Positions 532 through 45,695 of a DNA stretch of 64,000 nucleotides are shown here, piece after piece. Under the pieces are notes generated by a model. It did no database searches, was not told the origin of the DNA, and saw only the letters and a program-made list of their open reading frames with translations. The position numbers and the translations under genes are program-made. This DNA comes from Rebecca billardiae RCC1528. Lineage: Eukaryota; Protista; Haptophyta. The stretch lies in NCBI GenBank assembly GCA_965240325.2, contig OZ251246.1, positions 744,001 through 808,000 on the forward strand, in the 5' to 3' direction. Each line of letters opens with the position of its first letter. Position 1 is the first letter of the stretch.

Positions 532-3164
532 CACAGTGCCGGAAAACTGCTCAGGGTGACGTTTTAAGTTGTCCGCACCACTAGTCGAATCATCGGACAA
601 TTCTGAAGCGGTGCGCCTAAATTCGGCGCACCATAGGCGCGTCGAATCGTGGCACAGACCTTGGTAGCAGGCCACACCTGAGCGCGCTGCGCGCGCCGAC
701 GCGCGCTCGGCGCGGGCAAAAAATCATGCGCCGTTGGCATTACGCAGCCCCGCGCAGCGCTGTGCTCGAGCTCGGCGGCGGCGAAAGCGGGCGGGCGCAC
801 ACGGCGGTGCGCGTGCGCGCTGCTCCGAGCGCAGCTGCGGCCACCCCGGCGGCATACCGCCGGTCGAGGGCACGAAAACCGATTTTTCGGGAAAATGCAG
901 AGCAGCGGCGCCCGAGCGCGCCCGAGCTCGTCGCAGCACAGTCTCCTGGTGGCTGCGCCCCGTGAAGCCACGCCACGCGGGGCGCTGGCGTGCGCGTGGC
1001 CTGCGCCCACCGTGCGCTGCCCGATCATGGCCGTCGACCGCTCCGAGCGCCTCACCACGCGTGCTCGAGCCCACCGATACTGACGCCCGAGCACGGTGCC
1101 GGCAGCGCTCGCAGGTGGGCGTCGGAGAAAACACGCCGGCCGAACGAGCTTGAAGCGTCCGCCGCGATGCCAACGGCAGCGGACGACGTGCGCGCCACCT
1201 CGGCGCCAGTCGCCCAGCCCTTGCGCGGCGGTGCGGGCTCGCTCGTTCGCCGCCATCAGCTGCGCGCGCGCAGCCCGATCACTGCCCGCTGGTTCTGTTG
1301 TCGAGCAGCTGCGGCCTGCCACGCGCACTGCCGGACATTGAGCCACAGCGCGAGCACGCGCCTCGTCTGGCACGCGCGAGCACTCAGCATCGTGCGTGGC
1401 CACCATGACGCGCCCATCTGCGCCAGCAGCGATGAGCACGCCGCCGTTCAGCTCGCATCGGGCTCGCTCGCGACGCAGCAACGCGCGGCCGTAGCGGCAG
1501 CAGCGGCGCCGTCGAGCACGCGCAGCAAACAAATATGCAGCGCGGGCGAGTCGACGGTCTGGAAAATGCGCGATCACGCCACAGCAGGCTGGCAGAGCCC
1601 GCCCGAGCTGCAGCATGCCGTAGGTGCTGCCCCAAGCTCTCGACTGCCCGTAAGCGGCGGCATGTGCGGCGGCGCCGGCGGCGGCCATGCTGCCACGCCG
1701 TTGCGCGCCGCGGGGCGCCGTCGGCACCTCCGTGGTGAAGCGCACAGAGCTCGAGCCCACGGGGGCTGGCGACCGTCAAACCGACACCCCATGACGCGGG
1801 GCTGCGTGCGCCAGCTGCGCGCACTCCGTGGGCCCACCTAGCCCGCTCGAGCAGCTCGCCTTGGGTGCGCGCAGCGGCTCGAGCACACTGGTATGGGACG
1901 CCTGCCTGCGGTGCCGCCGAGCACATGCGGCCGACGGTCACTCAGCACGGGCGACTCGACGGCGGCGAGCAGGCGCGACGGCCTCGCCGCGCCGCGGAAA
2001 AGCCTGCCCGGGCTGCAGCACGCCGTAGGAGCAGCCCAGCGCCCTCCTCCGCCCTCCAGCTTCGGCGCGCGCAGCAGGCCCGGCGGCGGCCATGCTGGCG
2101 TGCCCAAGCATGAAGATGGGCGCGGCCGGCCGCGCCGTCGCAAAGCGCGCAGAACTCGAGCTCGGGGGGGCGGACGGCCGCCAAACTGGCGCGGCAGGAC
2201 GTGGCACTGCGTGCGCCAGCTGCGCGCACCCGCTGCGCCCGCGTGGCCCGTGCGAGCGCCGCGCCTCGAGCACACGCAGCTGCTCGACACAGCCACGGCA
2301 GTGTGGCTTGTGCGCGTGCACGTGATCAGTCTCAGCTCTGAGGCGCGCGCTCAGGAGGGCTGCGGCCGGGCCGAGCGCGATCTGCGCGGACGGTACAGCC
2401 TGGCGGCTCATGCCAGCCAGCCCAAAGCCCGCTCCGCCATCCGCGTCATGGCGCTCCAGCCTCTCGCGTGCTGCGCTGCAGCCGCGCTCGGCAAAGACGT
2501 CGCCCAGCCCGCCTTGCACGCGGCTGAGCAGTGGCAGCCAGGCGAAGCGTCGTCGCGGGCGAGGCTGCGCTGGGTGATGCGGCTCGGGTCGGTGGGCAAG
2601 TCGCACCCCGCCGTCGGTCGCCTCCACGCCTCAGGCTCGCTCGAGGTCAAAGACAACTGCGCGGCGCGGCGTTTGCGCGGGCGGGCCGCGGGCGTGGCGG
2701 GGTGTACGCGTGCAATGTCACAGCCTCCCACACAATTTCAGGAGGGTGAGACGCACCGCCAGCGGCACCCGCACACAATCCCACCCTGCGCGAGCCACCT
2801 GCCGTGTCGACTGAAGCATCAGGCTCGGGCGCAACCGCGGGCGGCGCATGCAAGAAGCTCGCGAAACGCACCGCGCGCGCCGTGAGGGCGAAAGGAGAGC
2901 ACCCGTCAGGGCGGCGAGGAACTTGCCCAGCGCCACGCGGAAGACGACCCCAGCCCGCGTCGACGCATAGTCGGGCCCGCGAGCAGCCTCGTCGGTCTTC
3001 GCCGAGTAGATCGCGCCGCGAGCCGAGGCACCGCTCGTTTGAGGCTCCGTCCGCCGCGAAGTCGCGGCTTCCACCCGAGTTCCACTGTCCGGCCGAGACC
3101 GGATTCGCTGACTCGAGCTGCGGACCGTCCGAAGCGTCACGGAAAATTCCAATCCTGCACTGTG
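532..3164. mobile_element. Non-autonomous TIR DNA transposon with CACAGTG termini (Transib/CMC-like)
   Basis: Left end CACAGTGCCGGA-N12-GTGACG; right end (reverse complement) CACAGTGCAGGA-N12-GTGACG, in register. Both flanks are TA-rich. No transposase recognised. Confidence 0.65.
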
Positions 3165-33360: not shown

Positions 33361-34467
33361 TTACGCCGGTGCAGCGTTGATCGACCAGTCGTAGCGGAAG
33401 TAGCGCAGGGCGGCCGGCTGCTGCTGCCCGTCGGCATCGTCGGCAGGGCTGCGCCCCGACAAAGCCCCGGTGGGGTCCCCTGGGCCGGACCGCATGGCAG
33501 AGTCGCTGCCGCCAACCAGCGCGGCCAATGCGCCGGCCGGGAGCAGCTCGCTGTGCGCGGCGAGGAAGCGGCGCACGCCCTCCGAGCCCTCGCCGAAGCG
33601 CGCAAAGTCTGTCTCGAACCACAGGAAGACACGAGATAGCCGCACGTGCAACGGCCCGGCGGGCGGCACGCGTGCGGCCGAGTCGGCGGGCGGCGACCAG
33701 GGGCCACCTCCTTCGACTTCGAGCCGGAGACCCTTCGTCGGGTTGGCTAGCCACTCGCGGAGCTGCGAGGCGACCTGCGCCTCGAGCCGCGCCGCGGCGT
33801 ACGCCTCGCGCCGCAGGTTGGGGCACGAGGCCGACGCGCACACGAGGCACGCATGCACGCCCGGCTCGTCCCAGACGGCCCTGAGCCGGCCGTTCTCGAT
33901 CTCGTTCAGCGAGATATTCCGCCCGCCGACGACGCCGTCGGTCAGGTCGAGCGCGCTCGTGCGCCCGCGCCCGAGCTCGTGCAGCGTGGCCGGCGCGCGC
34001 GCGCCGGCAGACGCCCGCACGTGCGACACGACGAGCGAGGCGCTGAGCGCGTTGTACGCATTGAGCCAAAAGGCGAGCTGCTCGCGCGGCGCGAGCGCAT
34101 CGACGTCCGCGGCGGCGAGCGCGTCGAGGTAGGCGGGGAAGCGCGGGTCGGCGCCGAGCGCGGCGTAGTCGATCACGTTCACGCCCTCGACCGAGCCTAC
34201 CGTCGCGCCGGCGCGCACGTGCGCCTTGAGGCACGCGTCCCAATCTGCGTGGTCAAACGAGACGGCGGCGGCGTCGGTCTGCGGCAGCTGGTCGAGGCGG
34301 CGTCTGCCGCGCACGTGGTGTACCGATGGGATGATGAGGCTCGATATACGCTGCTCCAGGCGGTACAGGAGCGGGCGGTGCGCATCGAGCGCCACTATGC
34401 GCGCGACGCCGAGCGCGCATACCACAGTGAGTGCGGCGCCGGTCCGCCATGCTGGACAGCACATCAT
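33361..34467 (-). CDS. DUF547 domain protein with N-terminal signal/anchor
   Basis: HADWDACL, IDYAAL, EQLAFWLNAYN, SLNEIEN..LR, VHACLVCASASCPNL, LSRVFLWF..DF, YDWSIN. Confidence 0.9.
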   Translation of the reverse strand: MMCCPAWRTGAALTVVCALGVARIVALDAHRPLLYRLEQRISSLIIPSVHHVRGRRRLDQLPQTDAAAVSFDHADWDACLKAHVRAGATVGSVEGVNVIDYAALGADPRFPAYLDALAAADVDALAPREQLAFWLNAYNALSASLVVSHVRASAGARAPATLHELGRGRTSALDLTDGVVGGRNISLNEIENGRLRAVWDEPGVHACLVCASASCPNLRREAYAAARLEAQVASQLREWLANPTKGLRLEVEGGGPWSPPADSAARVPPAGPLHVRLSRVFLWFETDFARFGEGSEGVRRFLAAHSELLPAGALAALVGGSDSAMRSGPGDPTGALSGRSPADDADGQQQPAALRYFRYDWSINAAPA

Positions 34468-34789: not shown

Positions 34790-34964
<175 letters not shown>

Positions 34965-35000: not shown

Positions 35001-38000
35001 CACCTCAAAGATGTGCGGGTGCCGTTTCTGGACGCTTCTAGCCTTGATCTCCTGAACATTTGTAGGGGAGATGAGTTTAGTCAGTCGACTGACTAAACTT
35101 TTTCTTCAATCAAGGCTCCTCACGACTAGGCGCCGTCTTGCACGAAATCCCTATCCTCTCGTCTGGCGGTCTTGCATCAAATCCTGGACTCGCGAGGGCA
35201 AGGGGTGGGCCCTCTACCTACGGCCGCCAAACCGGTAATACGCGTTCTGAGCCCGGTCTGGTTGCGGGCGGCCCGGGGCCGCCGCGCCCCGGCTGCCGGG
35301 GCGGCGACTCGGGGAGGCGAGCGTTGGCGCGCGCCCGCCGTGGCCGCGGCGGCAGCGGGGTCGTTGGGCCATCCCAGGGGTATCCGAGCCTCTCGACAAG
35401 GGGCCGTGGCTGCGCCTCGCGTGGGCTGTACTGCACGCGGGCAGCCGACACGAATGCGATGCGCCATCCAAGCGCGAGCCCGAGAGCTTTCGCGACACGG
35501 GTGCTGCGCGAGCACGTCTGAAGGAGCGGGCAAGGTCTCGAGAGGAAGCAGGGAGACCACAGAAGTGCTAGCTCGCAACGACAGTCAGGGAGCGCGAGCC
35601 GCCCCGCTGCGCTGCCTGAGCCGGTCGCCCCACGGGCACGGCCACGGGCCACGCGTGGCGGGCAAACGTGACTGCCGCGCGGCAAGGCTTGGTGAGTGTG
35701 TACATGCTTCAAGTGGCTGGTCGCTGGTAGAGCTGCTGCATCCCAATCGCGAGCAGCCAGTAACAGCGACTCGGCCGCGCCGCCGCGGCCGTGCTCCGCA
35801 GTTCTGGTGCCCGCTCGGAACTGACGGTCACGGTTGCGCACCCGCGGGCGGCGAGACCAGTCAGTGGGCCGGCTCTGCCGCCGTCCCTGAGCGTGACCCG
35901 CAGTGGCGTCGCCGGGCTTGCAGGGGGGTCTAAGCCGGCCGCCCGCCCGAACCGGAGCCTGGCACGACCGTATCCGGCCCGCGCCGCCGCGCGCTGCCAC
36001 AGTGGCCGGTGGCGGTGGCACGCGTCGGGCCCGCGCAGCCCGCGCGGCCCGCGCCGCCGCGCGGCCCGCGAGCGCGGGCCTCATCCGACGAATAATAAGA
36101 CTGACGAGTATCACGAACGAATATGGCGCCAATGCGGGATAGTGCGACTGGAGTGCTGAGCCGTGACTGACTACGTCATGCCTACCAGCCGTACGTACAT
36201 CCCCGCCCACTATTCGGATGGTAGCCCGCGGTCGGCGGCGGCGGGCCGCCGATGATTGTCCCGCCGGTCGCTGTGACATCCTTCCACTTACGCCAGGTGA
36301 AGCGCAGGCCGATGACCGACTGGAAGTCGGTGAACAGGACGAGCTGGTGCGGGCTCTCGGCGAGCGTCGTGGCGGGAGAGAAGATCTCGGCGTAGTTGTC
36401 CGACGCGTTGCCGTTCAGCGGAGCGATCGAGAAGAAGGGCCAGCCGGGGGCGAGCGGCAAGCTCGCGTGAGATGCGAGCTCGAGCTCGTACCGGCCGCGC
36501 AGCCAGCGGCCCAGGCGGTCCTCGGCGAAGAGGTCGATGACGGCAGCATCGTACGCGGTGGCATCGACCTGGACCGATGCGCGCTCGGCTGCGTGCAAGC
36601 CTCGGCAGTGCGCGACGACGCGCGTGAGCAGCCGATCGAAGATCGCCGCCTGCTGCTGCTGGCGGACGCGAATGTGCATCGGCTCCCGCCACAGGAACTC
36701 ACGGTACCGCGCGACGAGGTTGTGCACAGCCTCCGCCGGCGGGCGGTACAGCTTCGCGCCGTGCTCGATGGCGACGATGGTGACGTGGCGATACACCTTA
36801 CTGCCGGCGAGGCAGCCCGCGACACGGCGCTCGGACTCGACGCACGCCGCATTGCCGCAACCAGATCGGCGTCCGCGGCGATGCCAATCTCATCGCGCCC
36901 TGCGCGGCGCGCGCGGGCACGCGCGCAGGACGCGCGTCAACACGGGCGGCGGGGGGGAGCGGGCACGGCGCGCGCGCAGCGGGATCCGATCGTACCGAGA
37001 TCGAGCACGTGCTCGTCCGCCTCCCCGAGCAAGCACGGCCGCAGCGGGTAGCCGCGCTGCTGCCCGTCCTCCGCAGCCCCTGTCGTCGTCGGCAGCACGA
37101 TGCCGCCGTCCGGCTGCTTCCAGGCCTTCAGGCCGACACCGAACTCGAATGGCATGCGGGCGGTCGGGAGCTGCGCGATGACCTCCTCGGGTGGCTCGGT
37201 CAGATTCATGTTCGCCACATGCAGCACGTTGCGCTTGGCCTTGAACGGCTGCGGCTCGGACTCGCCCTGCCTGGCATCACAGACGACGGGGCGGACGACG
37301 ACACGCGGTGTTGGCGCGCCGCGGGTATGCGCGCGCAGGGAGGGATCGCGGGCGGGGCGGCGCACCTCGGGCGCTTGAACGCGGTCCATGCATTCACGAA
37401 GAAGTCCAGTGCGCCCCCGCGCGCGAGGAACTCCGCAAGGTTCTTCCACACCATCACCTTGCCATGCACCGTCTCGACCTCGATCTCCTCCTCCTTCCAG
37501 TTGCCGACGTGCTCGTAGACCTCCGCAGGGTGGTAGTCTGCGGTGCGCGTCTTGCCAGGCAAGTCCTCCACGAAGTAGAACCACTTTACCATGAGGGTCA
37601 CTGACCCCGCGACGACTTCTTGACGACGCGGCGCACCTGCGCGAGCCCGGCGCGCTCCGAAGGCCTGCCGTTCTTCTGCAGCCACTGCACGACGACATGG
37701 TCTCCGATTCCGATATTGATGCCGCGCCAGATGACGCCGACATTCCGCAATCGTCCTCCCCGCGTGGCGGCGGTGACGAGCTCCGGCGCGGTGGCCGGCG
37801 GGAGCTCCCCGCTCCGTCCATGACTTCGACAAACCGCGAGGGGCCGTTCGACCGGCGCTCAGCCGGAACGGAGCGACTCAACCAGGCTCGGCGGTTGCTC
37901 AAAAACCTATTCATGCCCTCCACCGCCCCTGGTGCAGGCCGGGCGTTGATTCATGATTGGCTGTCGGTTGCTATTGCAGTTTTAAGAAAATCTCGTGGAA

Positions 38001-38036
38001 CGTGGCCGGAAAAGGCACCCGCACATCTTTGAGGTG
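35001..38036. mobile_element. CAC-terminal TIR DNA transposon carrying a chromatin-domain cargo gene
   Basis: Perfect 23-bp TIR CACCTCAAAGATGTGCGGGTGCC (35001-35023 / 38014-38036), extending to about 31 bp with 2 mismatches. No clean TSD (GAT|...|ACT). Confidence 0.85.
36182..37821 (-). CDS. BAH-domain protein with possible divergent SET-like C-terminal region (spliced; two 1-nt frameshifts)
   Basis: Reconstructed GINIGIGDHVVVQW...LAQVRRV...VTLMVKWFYFVEDL...EVY...IEVETVHGKVMV...DFFVN follows the BAH pattern. Intron 37271-37365 keeps the frame; further introns near 36900-36995 and 36801-36847. Single G losses near 37808 and 37601. Confidence 0.6.
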
Positions 38037-38328
38037 ACTATGCCGAGTGATGAAGATATCGTCTATATAGCAGATATATATATAATATAGATCTCTCTCT
38101 CTCTCTCTCTCTAGTCGTCTCTACTAATAATACTTACTCAGCATACTAGTACTAAATACTAGCAGCCTACTACTACTCCGAGTCCGTACTCGCTAAGTCG
38201 GCAGGACGTCTCCGACTGCTGACGGCCGATACTTACTACGACTCAGCAGCCAAGTAAGACGTATCATGGATCGTCAGATTATTGGCTGCGGCCCCGTCTG
38301 CGGGCTGCAGGCTGCGAGTGCGGCGTGC

Positions 38329-40635: not shown

Positions 40636-41644
40636 AAGCCCATTTCACGTAACCAACCTCCAATAGCTGGCGGGAGTCTGAACTACAAACAATCTTGTGA
40701 AAGCCGAGGAGGCGAAGGGGGAAGGGCCGCCTGCGCATGGGGCCGTGAGCCCGCGTGCCGGCCGCTTGGTGGCCCCCGCCGCCGAGGTCGTCTCCGCGTC
40801 ACACATCGACGTGCGTCAGTTTGATGTGTCTCATCGGGCGTGTGTGAATACTTGCAGGGGCGCTGCATTCCTTGAAGGCTCGGTATCGCACCCCTCCGAG
40901 TGTGCACGCTCGTCAAGCCGTGACCGTGCGAGATGCTCGGCGTGTGGGCTTACACGCCGACAATGTAGGCGAGATGAGCGGTGCCGAGGGCCAAGAGATG
41001 GGTGATTCCACGCGGGAGTAGTCTCGTGCGAGGCGGCCGGCCCCTCGCGCATCGGCTCGGGGCGCGCCTGAAGCACTGGGCACTCTCATTCACACCCTTG
41101 TCTCCACCATCCCAAGCTTACCTTAAATATCTCAGAACGGCGTGTTTCTGTGATTTTGGCGAGTGTGTGGTGATCGCGGAGGCGACGGACAGGCTCACCA
41201 TGGCAGCTTCAGGCGCGCCCCGAGCCGATGCGCGAGGGGCCGGCCGCCTCGCATGAGACTACCCCCGCGTGGAATCACCCATCTCTTGGCCCTCAGCACC
41301 GCTCATCTCGCCTACATTGTCGGCGTGTAAGCCCACACGCCGAGCATCTCGCACGGTCACGGCTTGACGAGCGTGCACACTCGGAGGGGTGCGATACCGA
41401 GCCTTCAAGGAATGCAGCGCCCCTGCAAGTATTCACACACGCCCGATGAGACACATCAAACTGACGCACGTCGATGTGTGACGCGGAGACGACCTCGGCG
41501 GCGGGGGCCACCAAGCGGCCGGCACGCGGGCTCACGGCCCCATGCGCAGGCGGCCCTTCCCCCTTCGCCTCCTCGGCTTTCACAAGATTGTTTGTAGTTC
41601 AGACTCCCGCCAGCTATTGGAGGTTGGTTACGTGAAATGGGCTT
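40636..41644. mobile_element. Foldback/MITE-like element: 439-bp inverted arms, 131-bp spacer
   Basis: 40636-41074 is the reverse complement of 41206-41644; only about 3 substitutions seen. Confidence 0.9.
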
Positions 41645-41729
41645 ATCCAGTTTCGCTCGAGAGCTGGCCGCTTGCCCACCGTTCCGAAACACCTCCCTTG
41701 CCGAAACCGTCGTCATCCGGTCGACATCC

Positions 41730-44723
41730 ATGGCTGCCGTGCTCGCGCTCGGCCGACGTCACGCACCCTATGCGCACCGCTCGGAGTGGGTGGCGCTGCG
41801 GCCGGTGGATGTGCGCGCCGTGATACGGATGGAGCAGGAGGCGAGCACGTGGGTGCAGGCCGCCTGGCGCGGGCACGCCGTCCGCGCCGCGCTTCGAAAG
41901 CCACGGCGCGGCGGCATCAACGGCGCGCTCGCTTCGCCGCGGCCGGCGCCGCCCGCCCTGCGCACGCCGTCGCCGACGCCAAGGGTGCGGCGCGTGCTCG
42001 GCGGGAGAAACACCGAGGTGCCCACTGACGCCACCCTCAGCCGCGCCCTCCGCCTCGCCGCCGCCGCGCATGCCGCGGCGGCCAAGGGAAGGCCAGCGCC
42101 TGGGCGCGGCGCGGGCTCCGCAGCCGCCGCAGCCGCAACCGTGCGCGCGGTGCGCGGCGCGGCGCGACGGAGTGCTCGCGAGTGGGCCGGCGTGGCGGGT
42201 GAAGGCACGCACAGCGTCAGGCGCCGAGCGCTGGCGCGCTGGCGCGCTGCAGCCGCGCGAGACGGCGCGCACGCGGCCGCTGCGCGCGCGCCGCTGCGCG
42301 CGCGCCGCGCGTTGCGTGCCTTCGCCTCCGCCGCGGCCGCTGCGCGCGCGGCGAGCGGCCAGCTCGACGCAGCGGAGCGCGCGATGCTCAGCCGTGCCAT
42401 TCGAGCCCTCGTGCGCCTCGCCGCGCGCCGCGCAGCCGCGCTGGCGCTCGGCGCCGTCCGTGCTACACTTCCACTCGCGCGCTGGCGGGCGCGCGCGCGC
42501 GCGGCGCCGACTGCACGGTACGCCGGCGGTGCGGTGCGGCGGCGTGCGCTCGCGCGCGCGCTGGCGGAGGCCTCCGCGCGCTCGACCCGCGCGCACGTGG
42601 CGGCCGAGCGCCTCGACGCCGCCCGTGCACTGTGGGCGCGCACAGGCGCGCGGCGCGTGCTGCGCGCCGCACGCGCGGCCGCGGCGCCGCGCGCCGCGCG
42701 CCGCGCGCGCCTCCGGCGCATCGCCCTCGCGGCGTGGTGGCTGCTGTGCGCGCGGGCGGCGTCGGCGCGGGCGCAGCGGCGGATCGCGCGGCGCGCGGCG
42801 CTGGCGCGCGCGCGCGCGCGCTGGCTCGGCGCGTGGCGCGCGCGCATCCGCCGCCGCGCCGCGCGCGCGCGCAGCGGGCACGCTGCGGCCGCGGCCGAGC
42901 TCGCCGCAACAGCGGAGGTGCGGTGGCGCCGCAAGGCGGCCGCGGGTGGCCTCGTCGCGCTGCGGCGCAGTGCGGCGGCGGCGGCGGGCGCGGCGCCGGT
43001 GCGCGTGCGCGTGCGCACGCGCGACGCCATGGCGCGCGCGCACGCCCGTGCGCGCGCCACGGGGCACGCCCTGCGCGTGCTGACTGGCCGCTATCGAGCG
43101 GCCGCCGCGCGCGCCGCGGCCGCGGCCGCTGCGGCGGCGCTGGCAGCGGCGCGCGCAGCGGCCGCGGACGGCGTGGCGAGCGCGGCGACGGGCGAGGGCG
43201 CGTACGTGGCGCAGCTGCGCTGGCGCTTCGGCCGCTGGCGTGCGCGCCTCGCCGCCGCGCCCTCGCGCGCCCTCGCGCACGTGCGCCGCGCTCAGCGCGC
43301 GCGCGCAGCCGCGGCCGCGCTGTCTCGAATCGCAGGCGCCGCGGCGCGCGCGCACGCGCGCGCGGCGCGCGCCGAGCGCGCGCGCGACGCGTGGCGACGC
43401 GCGGCGCTGCGTGAGACGGCGGGCGGCGCGGCGGCCGTGCGCGTGCACAGCGCAGAGCACGCGCTCGCCCTCGCCGCGCGCTCGCTGCGCGCGCTCGACT
43501 CCGCGCTCCGGCGCCTTGCAAGCGCTCGTGCCGCGCGCCGCGCCGCGCGCGCGGCCGCGGCCGCGATCGCCGCGCGGCGCGCGAGCGCCGCACTGCTCGC
43601 GGCGCACGTGCACGCCGCGAAGTTCGCACGCGCGCGCGTGGCGGCGGCCGTGCACGCGCGGCACGCCGGCGCGCGCGCGCTCCGCGCGCTGAGCGCCGCG
43701 GCGCTCCTGGCGCGCGCCTCCGCCGCGCAAGCCGCCGCGGCGCGCGCGCGCCGCGCCGCGGGCGGCAGTGGTGGTGCTTTGCTCGCGTGGCGGCGGCACG
43801 CGCGGCGGGGCGTGGCGGCGGGCAGCGGCGCAGCGGGGCAGGCGGTGCGTGCGCGGGCGAGTGCTCTGGCCGCATGGGCCGGGGCCGCGCACGCGTCCCG
43901 CCGCGCCGCCGCGCGCGCCGCCATCGCCCACGCGGGTGCGGCGCGCGCGCGCGCGGCGCGCGGCGCGCGGCGGTGGCGGCGCGCCGCGGTGCAACTTGCG
44001 CGGGCGGCCGCGGCGGAGGCGGTTGCGGCGCGGCACGCGCGGCTCGGCGTGTTGCGCGCGTGGGCGGCTGCACCGCCGCGCGCGCCATCGCCCACGCCCG
44101 CGCACCTTCGGCACGCCGCCCTCGCGCCCCGCTGGCGCGCGTGGTCCCGCGAGGCGCGCGGCGCGCGGCGCCGCGCCGCCGCGCGCGCGGCCGCGCGCCA
44201 CGGCACGGCCGCGGCCGCGTGGCGGCGCGCTTGGGGGCTGTGGCGGGGCCACGCGCTGGCGCGCGTGCTCGGCGAGGGCGCGGGGCAGGCGGCGCGCGGC
44301 GCGCATCGCGCACGCGCGCTCCGCGCCGCGTGCGCGGCGTGGCGCAGGCTGGCCGTCTCGGCGACGGCTGCGGCTGCGGCCGCCGCCGCAGCCCCTGAAG
44401 CAGACATGCCTGCGGCCGCGCCGCAAGCGGCCGCGCCGCAAGCGGCCGCGCCGCCTGCCGCCGCGACGCCCGCGGCCGTGCCGCCGCCGTCGTCGCAGCC
44501 ATGGCACGCTGCTGCGGCGGCGGCTGCCGAGGGTGTGCCCGCCACCGCCGCGAGCGCGCCGCCGGCAAGCTCTGCTCTGCGGTACTGGCGCGCGCGGGAG
44601 GTCGACGCAGCCGCCGTGCGCGCTCGCTCGCCCCGCCCACCCGCCGCGCGCGCCGCGCCCGCAAGCGCCATTGGGCGCGTGCCCTTGCCCGAGGCGCGGA
44701 GCGCGGCGCGCGGCGGCGCGGCA

Positions 44724-44756
<33 letters not shown>

Positions 44757-45695
44757 AGCGGCGGCGGCGCTGGGCCTCTGCGTGTCGTGCGTGGCGGCGG
44801 CATCCGTCCCGTCAGCAGCCGCGCTGCCGACGGCGGACCCCACGGCCGCGCCGTCGCGCGGGCGTGGCACACCCTGCGCACGCACGCAGGCGCGGCGCGC
44901 GCGCGCACACATGTCGCGGCGCGCGTGCTCGACCGCCGCCGCGCGCGCGCGCTGCGGCTGTGGGCGGCGGCGGCCTTTGCAGCCCGTGTGGGCAGGGCAG
45001 CGCTCGGCGCCGCGGCCGTGGCATGGCGCGCGCACGCCCGCGCGGCAGCGGCGCGCGCGGCAGCGGCGGCGGCCGTGGTCGCTGCCGCTCGCGCGCGCGG
45101 CTGGGCGCGCACGCGCAGCGCGTGCGCGAGCGCGCGCGTGCGCAGGAGGCCGCGGCACGTGCAGCCAGGCGGGGGCGCGAGTGCCCTGGGCGCCGCCGCT
45201 GCACGCTCGGCGCTCGCGCGCTGGGCAAAGGCAGCAGCGCTTGAGCTCGCACTGGCCGTGCCCCCGCCTGCGCCAAGCCCCACGCACGCCCCCCCAGCGG
45301 CCTCGCCGTCACGCGCCGCCGCCGCCGCCGCCGCCGTGGCAGCCCGCCCGTGGAGCCGTGCTGAAGCGGCGGTGCGCACGGCCGCGGATGGCAGCAGTGC
45401 AACGCCGCGGCGCGCCGCGGGGTCGCAGCCCAAGCCGCGGCAGTCGCCCGTGCGCGCGCCGCGCGCGACACGCGAGCAAGGGCCGGCAGAGCGACCCCTG
45501 GTCCGAGCGCGCGTGACAGCCGCGTCCCGCCGCGTGCTGCTGCGCGCAGCGGCGCGCCAGACGGCGACGGCGCGCTGCGCGGACGCACTGGGCGTGTGGC
45601 GGGCTCTGGCACAGCGCGCGGCACTGCGCGAGCTCCGCGCGCTCGGAGCGCGCGTTCGCAGTGGTGCTGGCAGCATGACGACGAAGCATCATTGA
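41730..45695 (+). CDS. Large Ala/Arg-rich protein with IQ motif and Sfi1-like Trp repeats
   Basis: N-terminal IQ-like TWVQAAWRGHAVR; recurring (A/L)xxW(R/A) units (ALARWR, LGAWR, FGRWR, LLAWR, LGVWR). The start is uncertain. Confidence 0.55.

What the first reader, a model, noticed from the sequence alone, without database searches (positions are those of the whole stretch)
35001..38036. TIR transposon carrying a BAH (plus possible SET-like) chromatin gene instead of a transposase
Seen: perfect 23-bp CAC...GTG TIRs enclose one spliced minus-strand gene (about 37821 to 36182) that the ORF track splits into pieces. Restoring one G at about 37808 and one at about 37601 and removing intron 37271-37365 gives MDGAGELP...GINIGIGDHVVVQW...LAQVRRV...VKWFYFVEDL...EVY...IEVETVHGKVMV...DFFVN. 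Established: this order matches BAH domains (GD.V.V / IA.I / V.WFY / ELF / I.V..I.GK..V / FFC), which read methylated histones in ORC1, CMT3 and EBS/SHL. Inference: downstream FGVGLKAWKQPDGGIVL and IAPLNGNASDN...QLVLFT...GLRFTW resemble the N- and C-halves of a SET domain around an insert; a non-NHS motif has precedent in ATXR5/6-type SETs. A mobile BAH(-SET) module could be a transposon-encoded chromatin reader/writer or anti-silencing factor, analogous to VANC proteins of VANDAL elements. This is the best candidate for an undescribed system in the window.
Basis: partly seen in the sequence, partly recalled or inferred. Interest (0 to 1): 0.85.

Follow-up and report, generated by a model that had tools for sequence, protein, structure and literature searches.

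The report
Algal transposon carrying a double-BAH gene
A 3-kb mobile DNA element of a GC-rich haptophyte-like alga carries, in place of a transposase, a now broken gene for a protein with two chromatin-binding BAH domains and an unknown tail, so the element may bring its own chromatin factor; the proposed SET enzyme part is not there.

Summary
Perfect 23-bp inverted repeats at 35001-35023 and 38014-38036 bound a 3036-bp element with one minus-strand gene.

- **Mobile.** A second copy (98.8% identical) starts exactly at the repeat end. Another contig leaves the window sequence exactly at 38036.
- **Seen before.** First readers noted seven more copies of about 3.04-3.08 kb on other pieces of this genome. 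I could not check them.
- **BAH confirmed.** A profile of the N-terminal domain family hits only BAH structures (SHL, E 1e-5). The AlphaFold model of a homologue matches only BAH folds.
- **New: a second BAH.** The middle region is a divergent second BAH (Z 5-7.2 to 19 chains, 18 of them BAH-containing).
- **SET rejected.** There is no SET hit by Pfam, PDB profile or fold. The confidently modelled C-terminal domain of about 150 aa matches no known fold.
- **No transposase.** The other 1.16 kb shows no coding signal.
- **This copy is dead.** Two 1-nt frame breaks are shared with the second copy. I also found an 8-nt insertion and a second intron (36900-36995).
- **Relatives.** Ten rare, unnamed homologues occur in other marine protist samples. 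They keep both introns, and at least one is spliced.

Best reading: a non-autonomous CAC...GTG transposon carrying its own chromatin-reader gene. Its function is inferred, not shown.

The parts
35001..35023 (+). Left terminal inverted repeat: 23 bp perfect, imperfect to 35031
38014..38036 (-). Right terminal inverted repeat: 23 bp perfect, imperfect from 38006. This is the outer boundary of the element.
   Evidence: A contig of run X1 diverges exactly at 38036. The second copy, L001, starts exactly here.
35024..36181 (.). Non-coding GC-rich arm downstream of the gene. It holds a 26-bp palindrome at 35074-35099, a 34-nt tandem repeat at 35117-35184 and a (GGCCCGCGC)n repeat at 36028-36070.
   Evidence: No period-3 GC signal. 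No Pfam hit on its ORFs. No Rfam family. Repeats.
37366..37821 (-). Exon 1, from the putative ATG at 37821. It encodes BAH domain 1 (about 37740-37380). It is broken by 1-nt frame changes in G4 runs at 37807-37810 and 37605-37608.
   Evidence: The piece 37367-37601 against the homologue profile gives E 8e-9. The piece 37601-37810 is weak but collinear, E 2.4e-3. BAH assignment for the family.
37271..37365 (-). Intron 1: 95 nt, GT-AG, phase 2
   Evidence: L003 has a retained intron at the same position and phase.
36996..37270 (-). Exon 2: a linker and the first part of BAH domain 2, which starts at about 37140 (FGVGLKAW...)
   Evidence: BLASTP to P0012, E 3e-10. Residues 44-137 of the P0003 model match BAH folds at Z 5-7.2. 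GC3 signal.
36900..36995 (-). Intron 2: 96 nt, GT-AG, phase 1
   Evidence: The homologous intron is shown by L003 (spliced) against L012 (89-nt GT...AG retained).
36182..36899 (-). Exon 3 with stop codon. It holds the end of BAH domain 2 (to about 36735) and the family-specific C-terminal domain (GW.FF, AEIV, LFTDF..GLRF.RRKW, GP.PP..GY.P). It is broken by an 8-nt insertion at about 36850-36857 that copy L001 lacks.
   Evidence: No known fold for the C-terminal domain.
37822..38013 (-). 5' untranslated and presumed promoter region between the right TIR and the ATG
   Evidence: Position only. Copy L001 has a 7-nt deletion here.

Best explanation
**What it is.** This is one defective copy of a roughly 3.04-kb cut-and-paste (TIR) DNA transposon family of a GC-rich, haptophyte-like alga. 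Its ends read CAC...GTG.

**How it moves.** The element encodes no recognisable transposase, so an enzyme made elsewhere in the genome must move it (inferred).

**Its gene.** The single gene has three exons and is read inward from the right end. When intact it would encode about 480 aa:
- BAH1, closest to the EBS/SHL/BAHCC1/TNRC18 histone-mark readers.
- BAH2, a divergent second BAH.
- A roughly 150-aa alpha/beta domain of unknown fold, with a basic RRKW motif and a proline-rich tail.

**Likely role (inferred).** The protein binds nucleosomes or histone tails for the benefit of the element family. I favour a VANC-like role, blunting or decoying host silencing on the copies. Tethering the transposition complex to a chromatin state is the second choice.

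**This copy.** It cannot make the protein. It carries two 1-nt frame breaks and an 8-nt insertion. A second copy at another locus shares the two 1-nt breaks, so the element was still copied after its gene broke.
For: Shown:
- Perfect TIRs, far beyond chance.
- A second copy, L001, is 98.8% identical and begins exactly at the TIR end. It carries the same two G4 frame breaks but not the 8-nt insertion.
- A contig of run X1 carries L001's diagnostic changes and leaves the window sequence exactly at 38036, running into a different flank.
- Only one coding region shows by period-3 GC, and no Pfam hit falls elsewhere.
- BAH1: Pfam BAH E 1.8e-5 on a homologue, below the curated cut-off. All 14 PDB hits of the family profile are BAH proteins, best SHL at E 1.1e-5. 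The top 50 Foldseek hits of the model are all BAH structures.
- BAH2: the 19 top rows by VIA-align have Z 4.6-7.2 (16 at Z 5 or more). Eighteen are BAH-containing chains and one is ROS1. The next row falls to Z below 3. The best Atlas row is also a BAH family.
- Ten homologues at 30-42% identity among 1.84 billion representatives, all unnamed.
- Both introns are conserved in place and phase, and L003 against L012 shows splicing.
- Near-identical decaying copies exist in another organism.

Leads, not tested: seven more copies of the same size noted by first readers on other pieces of this genome.
Against: - No target-site duplication is visible at this copy.
- No transposase partner with these TIRs was identified.
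- No TIRs could be found around the homologues elsewhere. Their contigs are short, and L010 (4.2 kb) shows none. So I have shown TE carriage only in this genome.
- No RNA data exist for this organism.
- One of the three aromatic cage positions of SHL-type readers is Gly throughout the family, so methyl-lysine reading is not assured.
- The first half of BAH1 in the window is only weakly supported on its own.
- The shared G4 runs could be a systematic homopolymer error if both data sets are long-read. The contigs of run X1, whose sequencing platform is not on record, agree at 37807-37810 only.
Confidence: 0.7

Rival explanations
1. The BAH protein is a targeting subunit. It works with a transposase encoded elsewhere and tethers the transposition complex to a particular chromatin state. 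Chromodomains of chromoviral integrases work this way.
For: TE capture of chromatin readers (Chromo, PHD) for targeting is documented (preprint 10.1101/2021.11.30.470311). Both the BAH1 and BAH2 folds are supported. This copy and the other CAC-ended element in the window both sit in AT-rich islands of a GC-rich genome.
Against: Known targeting readers are fused to the integrase or transposase, or encoded beside it. Here the element has no transposase. The second copy's flank is GC-rich, so I see no common target.
Confidence: 0.25
2. The element is autonomous. The unknown C-terminal domain would be a new kind of transposase or recombinase, guided by the two BAH domains.
For: All the copies noted so far are about 3.04-3.08 kb and carry only this gene (these are notes I did not check). 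The C-terminal domain is confidently modelled yet matches no known fold. In the haptophyte Tisochrysis lutea, small single-ORF elements carry transposases that Pfam cannot see (PMC10138859).
Against: Only one acidic residue is invariant (D of TDF), with E of AEIV nearly so, and there is no DDE or PD-(D/E)xK pattern. There is no RNase H-like, nuclease or recombinase fold match above Z 2.7. Two copies at different loci share the same frame breaks, so copying did not need the copy's own protein.
Confidence: 0.08
3. The gene of this copy is really intact. The two G4 'frame breaks' would be homopolymer errors of the assembly.
For: Both breaks lie in runs of four G, where one more G restores the frame. 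First readers called some other copies intact.
Against: An independent contig, L001, from another copy has the same two runs. A contig of run X1 agrees at 37807-37810. The 8-nt insertion at 36850-36857 is not a homopolymer error and breaks the frame anyway.
Confidence: 0.1
4. This is an ordinary host gene family spread by segmental duplication, and the inverted repeats are incidental.
For: The homologues in other organisms could not be shown to lie inside TIR elements. The introns are conserved as in host genes.
Against: Similarity between the copies ends exactly at the outer base of the TIR. The TIR is perfect over 23 bp, with 0 expected by chance. The copies noted elsewhere have the same length.
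Confidence: 0.03

Closest known systems
EBS/SHL, BAHCC1 and TNRC18-type BAH histone-mark readers
   Same: BAH1 of the family gives its best sequence-profile and fold matches to these (SHL E 1.1e-5, EBS Foldseek 9e-5). The W-x-Y part of the aromatic cage is kept in the window (KWFYF).
   Different: The third cage aromatic is Gly in the whole family. There is no PHD finger. The protein is carried by a transposon and has a second BAH and an unknown C-terminal domain.
Tandem BAH1-BAH2 modules of DNMT1/MET1/DIM-2 and Polybromo
   Same: Two BAH folds lie in one chain. BAH2 aligns with DNMT1 BAH2 (Z 7.1), MET1, DIM-2 and PBRM1.
   Different: No C5-methyltransferase domain, bromodomain or other catalytic domain follows. 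The C-terminal domain matches nothing.
VANC anti-silencing proteins of VANDAL (Mutator-like) transposons of Arabidopsis
   Same: Both are transposon-encoded accessory proteins that are not transposases and are thought to act on the element's own chromatin state. This is a functional analogy from my own knowledge.
   Different: I detected no sequence or fold relation. VANDAL elements also encode their transposase, and this element does not. I tested no function here.
Chromodomain-bearing retrotransposons (chromoviruses) and other TE-reader fusions
   Same: A mobile element has recruited a chromatin-reader domain (preprint 10.1101/2021.11.30.470311).
   Different: Here a stand-alone double-BAH protein is the only product of a TIR element.
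CACTA-Mirage-Chapaev/Transib group and their non-autonomous, gene-carrying derivatives
   Same: The ends read CAC...GTG, the element is bounded by TIRs and has no transposase. A RAG1/Transib/Chapaev-like element with CACAG ends is noted in the same genome (s1-363241, not tested).
   Different: I saw no 2-5 bp target-site duplication at this copy. The TIR sequence differs from the CACAGTG-ended element in this window. The cargo is a whole gene with conserved introns and homologues in other species, not a captured fragment.

Membership tests
BAH domain (PF01426) | Significant match to the curated Pfam model | tested here: inconclusive
   The window ORFs give no hit at E<=1. Homologue L006:249-638 scores 25.1 bits, E 1.8e-5, below the 30.8-bit cut-off. 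L004 gives E 0.019.
BAH domain (PF01426) | A family profile matches solved BAH domains and nothing else | tested here: met
   All 14 PDB hits of the profile are BAH proteins, best SHL at E 1.1e-5. The window piece 37367-37601 joins the homologue profile at E 8e-9.
BAH domain (PF01426) | BAH fold | tested here: met
   The model of homologue BAH1 (pLDDT 72.7) has only BAH structures among its top 50 Foldseek hits. Middle region: 19 top rows at Z 4.6-7.2, 18 of them BAH-containing and one ROS1, then a drop to Z below 3. Both models are of homologues, not of the broken window copy.
Methyl-lysine-reading BAH subclass (EBS/SHL/BAHCC1) | Three-residue aromatic cage | tested here: inconclusive
   W and Y of the W-x-Y motif are present in the window (KWFYF). 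The position of the third aromatic in SHL is Gly in all family members (alignment).
SET-domain lysine methyltransferase | Match to SET by sequence profile | tested here: not met
   No Pfam hit at E<=1 on the window pieces or on nine homologues. The family profile gives 0 PDB hits at E<=10.
SET-domain lysine methyltransferase | SET fold and conserved NHS / ELxF(Y)DY-type motifs | tested here: not met
   No SET chain appears among the Foldseek, VIA-align or Atlas rows shown. The 'NGNAS' stretch is not conserved. The proposed N-SET half lies in BAH2.
TIR (cut-and-paste) DNA transposon | Terminal inverted repeats at the limits of the repeated unit | tested here: met
   The 23-bp repeat is perfect. 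Copy L001 starts at the TIR end, and an X1 contig diverges at 38036.
TIR (cut-and-paste) DNA transposon | Several copies at different loci | tested here: met
   I showed a second locus. Seven more copies come from first-reader notes that I did not verify.
TIR (cut-and-paste) DNA transposon | Target-site duplication | tested here: not met
   The flanks ...TCGTCGAT and ACTATGCC... share no direct repeat of 1-10 bp. With only one complete copy available, this is weak evidence.
TIR (cut-and-paste) DNA transposon | Encoded transposase (autonomy) | tested here: not met
   There is only one gene. It has no DDE, RNase H or nuclease fold or motif. The element therefore counts as non-autonomous.
CACTA-Mirage-Chapaev/Transib group | CAC... 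termini with a 2-5 bp TSD and a cognate transposase | tested here: inconclusive
   The CAC...GTG ends are present and no TSD is seen. A partner with the same TIRs cannot be searched for with these tools.
VANC-like anti-silencing factor | Loss of silencing marks on the element's own family when the protein is expressed | not testable with these tools
   This is a functional property, and I detected no homology.

The most novel reading that the evidence does not exclude
A long-lived family of TIR elements in marine protists whose only product is a double-BAH chromatin protein. One possibility is a transposon-borne factor that manipulates host silencing or chooses insertion chromatin, in a split system with the transposase encoded elsewhere. 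The less likely possibility is that its unknown C-terminal domain is a new kind of DNA-transposition enzyme.
Probability: 0.25. Interest if true: 0.8.

Novelty: new variant of a known kind. Interest (0 to 1): 0.6.

Why it matters
Transposons are known to borrow chromatin readers, but usually as Chromo or PHD domains fused to their integrase or transposase. Here a DNA transposon family carries, as its only gene, a stand-alone double-BAH protein with an unknown domain. The gene keeps its introns, and rare relatives occur in other marine protists.

If the protein acts on the element's own chromatin, it would be a second, independent case of the VANC-type strategy. That would be in a lineage (haptophyte-like algae) whose silencing pathways are barely known.

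The C-terminal domain is also a confidently modelled fold with no known relative.

Tried and rejected
- **Pfam** on the raw window ORFs and on the ORFs of the non-coding arm gave nothing.
- **Single pieces against PDB** gave only an artefactual polyubiquitin hit and noise.
- **ESM Atlas by features.** Nothing usable for the C-terminal exon. For P0003 138-310, only scores below 0.9, including AHJR-like and influenza PA-X nucleases. I rejected the nuclease idea because no PD-(D/E)xK pattern is conserved and no nuclease fold matches.
- **The search for homologous proteins** with the middle exon and with alignment A1 found nothing new.
- **A degenerate motif scan** found two metagenome contigs and none in viral contigs.
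- **TIR searches around homologues** (L010 and the ends of all contigs) were negative.
- **Subterminal repeats.** The two ends share none beyond the TIR.
- **Rfam** gave nothing.
- **Corrected reading of exon 3.** I first placed the exon 3 start at the GTG at 36796 and took L001's 8-nt gap for intron sequence. The comparison of L003 with L012 and the L001 translation corrected this.
- **A circular comparison.** One search compared a window piece with an alignment that contained it. I discarded it and repeated the test without the window rows.
- **Literature.** Four searches found no BAH-carrying TIR element.
Full report
**1. The observation**

The sequence CACCTCAAAGATGTGCGGGTGCC occurs in the window only at 35001-35023 (+) and 38014-38036 (-). 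None is expected by chance. The repeat continues imperfectly to 31 bp. I saw no target-site duplication in the flanks.

A period-3 GC profile gives GC3 of 0.84-0.92 over 36200-36800, 36950-37270, 37370-37600 and 37600-37775. The phase jumps at about 37600 with no gap.

The 1.16 kb from 35001 to 36180 has no coding signal. It also has no Pfam hit and no Rfam family. So the element holds one gene and no transposase.

**2. It is mobile and multi-copy**

Logan contig L001, from another run, is 98.8% identical to 38036-36051 and starts exactly at the outer base of the right TIR.

A contig of run X1 carries L001's diagnostic 7-nt deletion and two substitutions. It leaves the window sequence exactly at 38036 and runs into a different flank. 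That shows a second locus, with the TIR end as the boundary.

First readers noted seven further TIR-plus-BAH elements of 3036-3081 letters on other pieces of the same genome: s1-350608, s1-365466, s1-358039, s1-360811, s1-372026, s1-346459 and s1-360759. I could not check these. They are leads, but they agree with my result.

**3. The host**

The neighbouring gene at 33364-34467 (-) is a DUF547 gene. Its best named relative is from the haptophyte Diacronema lutheri, at 45% identity. This fits another agent's description of the genome as a very GC-rich haptophyte-type alga.

The element lies about 530 bp upstream of that gene, next to an (AT)86 microsatellite.

**4. Relatives of the protein**

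An exhaustive HMMER search with the C-terminal exon found ten relatives among 1.84 billion representatives. They are 30-42% identical, with E from 1e-33 to 1e-4. All come from short Logan, JGI or ENA contigs. None has a functional name and none has a Pfam family.

I fetched their contigs. In several of them (L002, L003, L004, L006, L007, L012; one search adds L010) a BAH-like ORF and a middle ORF lie upstream of the C-terminal ORF. Frame changes fall at the same two places as in the window.

L003 and L012, from one sample, are identical except for an 89-nt GT...AG segment. These are the spliced and unspliced forms of one transcript. The homologue is therefore expressed, and intron 2 is real.

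Both introns have the same position and phase in L003 and in the window.

L010 and L011 are 98.4% identical. They differ by 7 non-synonymous changes (one a stop), 5 synonymous changes, and 13-nt and 3-nt indels in exon 3. That is the look of decaying repeated copies.

I found no TIRs around any homologue. The contigs are short, and L010 (4.2 kb) shows none.

**5. Gene model in the window**

| Part | Coordinates | Note |
|---|---|---|
| Exon 1 | 37821-37366 | |
| Intron 1 | 37365-37271 | 95 nt, phase 2 |
| Exon 2 | 37270-36996 | |
| Intron 2 | 36995-36900 | 96 nt, phase 1 |
| Exon 3 | 36899-36182 | includes the stop codon |

An intact version would encode about 480 aa.

The window copy has three lesions:
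- A 1-nt loss in a G4 run at 37807-37810.
- A 1-nt loss in a G4 run at 37605-37608.
- An 8-nt insertion at about 36850-36857.

The homologues are continuous across the 37605 site. L001 shares both G4 runs but lacks the 8-nt insertion, and its exon 3 reads through and aligns with P0012 at E 1e-37.

Two copies at different loci share the two breaks. So the element was copied after its gene was already broken, which means it was moved in trans.

Three caveats apply:
- The 37807 break rests only on the position of the ATG.
- The first half of BAH1 in the window is weakly supported on its own.
- A systematic homopolymer error is not fully excluded.

**6. What the protein is**

*BAH1.* Pfam BAH scores below its cut-off on homologues: 25.1 bits, E 1.8e-5. 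A profile of the N-terminal family hits 14 PDB sequences, all of them BAH proteins. These are SHL (1.1e-5), EBS, Rsc1, AIPP3, TNRC18, BAHCC1, RSC2, ORC1b, PBRM1 and ASI1. The AlphaFold model of the L006 domain (pLDDT 72.7) has only BAH structures among its top 50 Foldseek hits.

*BAH2.* In the model of P0003 (pLDDT 71.8), residues 44-137 align with MTA1, DNMT1 BAH2, ORC1b, TNRC18, EBS, Sir3, MET1, DIM-2, PBRM1, ASH1L and others at Z 5-7.2. Those 19 rows (18 BAH-containing chains and ROS1) are followed by a drop to Z below 3. Weak Foldseek rows and the best Atlas row agree. The window's exon 2 matches this region of P0012 at E 3e-10.

*C-terminal domain.* About 150 aa are modelled at pLDDT 84-96. 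They match nothing: 0 PDB profile hits, no fold above Z 2.7 and nothing in the Atlas. Its conserved motifs are GW.FF, AEIV, LFTDF....GLRF.RRKW and GP.PP..GY.P. D of TDF is the only invariant acidic residue.

*SET.* I reject it. The proposed N-half is the start of BAH2. The proposed NHS-like stretch is not conserved. No SET hit appears in any search.

**7. How it most likely works**

Shown:
- It is a TIR-bounded multi-copy element.
- I found no transposase in it.
- It carries a double-BAH gene.
- This copy is dead.

Inferred:
- A transposase encoded elsewhere moves it. A RAG1/Transib/Chapaev-like element with CACAG ends is noted in this genome (s1-363241, untested).
- The protein binds chromatin for the benefit of the family.
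- I favour anti-silencing or decoy action on repressive marks (about 45% within this reading) over insertion targeting (about 30%).
- The cage of BAH1 keeps W-x-Y, but Gly replaces the third aromatic, so the ligand is open.

**8. What is known**

The literature I could search describes TE capture of Chromo and PHD readers, fused to TE enzymes. Four searches found no BAH-carrying TIR element.

I class this as a new variant of a known kind: a non-autonomous TIR transposon, or a transposon-borne chromatin factor.

**9. Steps I left out**

All searches and folds used window pieces or unaltered homologues, by reference.

Noticed in passing
window 34791-34962: A perfect (AT)86 microsatellite lies 38 bp from the left TIR. 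The right flank (38037-38260) is also AT-rich, with a (CT)n run. So the element sits in an AT-rich island of a 65-80% GC genome.
   Followed up: partly
window 33364-34467 (-): A DUF547 gene (Pfam E 4e-21). Its best named relative is Diacronema lutheri at 45% identity, which places the host among haptophyte-like algae.
   Followed up: yes
window 532-3164: Another element with CACAGTG ends (first-reader note s1-358179), also flanked by (TA)-rich DNA. Its left end reads CACAGTGCCGGAAAA. The reverse complement of GCCGGAAAA lies just inside the right TIR of the BAH element. This may be chance or a shared binding motif.
   Followed up: partly
window 35074-35099 and 35117-35184: A perfect 26-bp palindrome and a 34-nt tandem repeat (1.9 copies) lie in the left subterminal region of the element. 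The right end has no counterpart.
   Followed up: partly
L003 vs L012 (JGI sample 3300016936): The two contigs are identical except for an 89-nt GT...AG segment, so they are spliced and intron-retaining transcripts of one homologue. Both keep intron 1, which carries an in-frame stop.
   Followed up: yes
L010 and L011 (JGI Ga0181565, Ga0181576): Near-identical (98.4%) copies of a distant family member. One has a nonsense codon and the other a 13-nt frameshifting indel.
   Followed up: yes
window 41637-45695: Very long ORFs on both strands (1352 and 1214 aa) in a region of 78-85% GC, with no Pfam hit. They are probably by-products of the extreme GC content.
   Followed up: partly
alignment A1, C-terminal tail: A conserved proline-rich tail, GP.PP..GY.P, ends the protein in most family members. 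It may be a docking motif.
   Followed up: no
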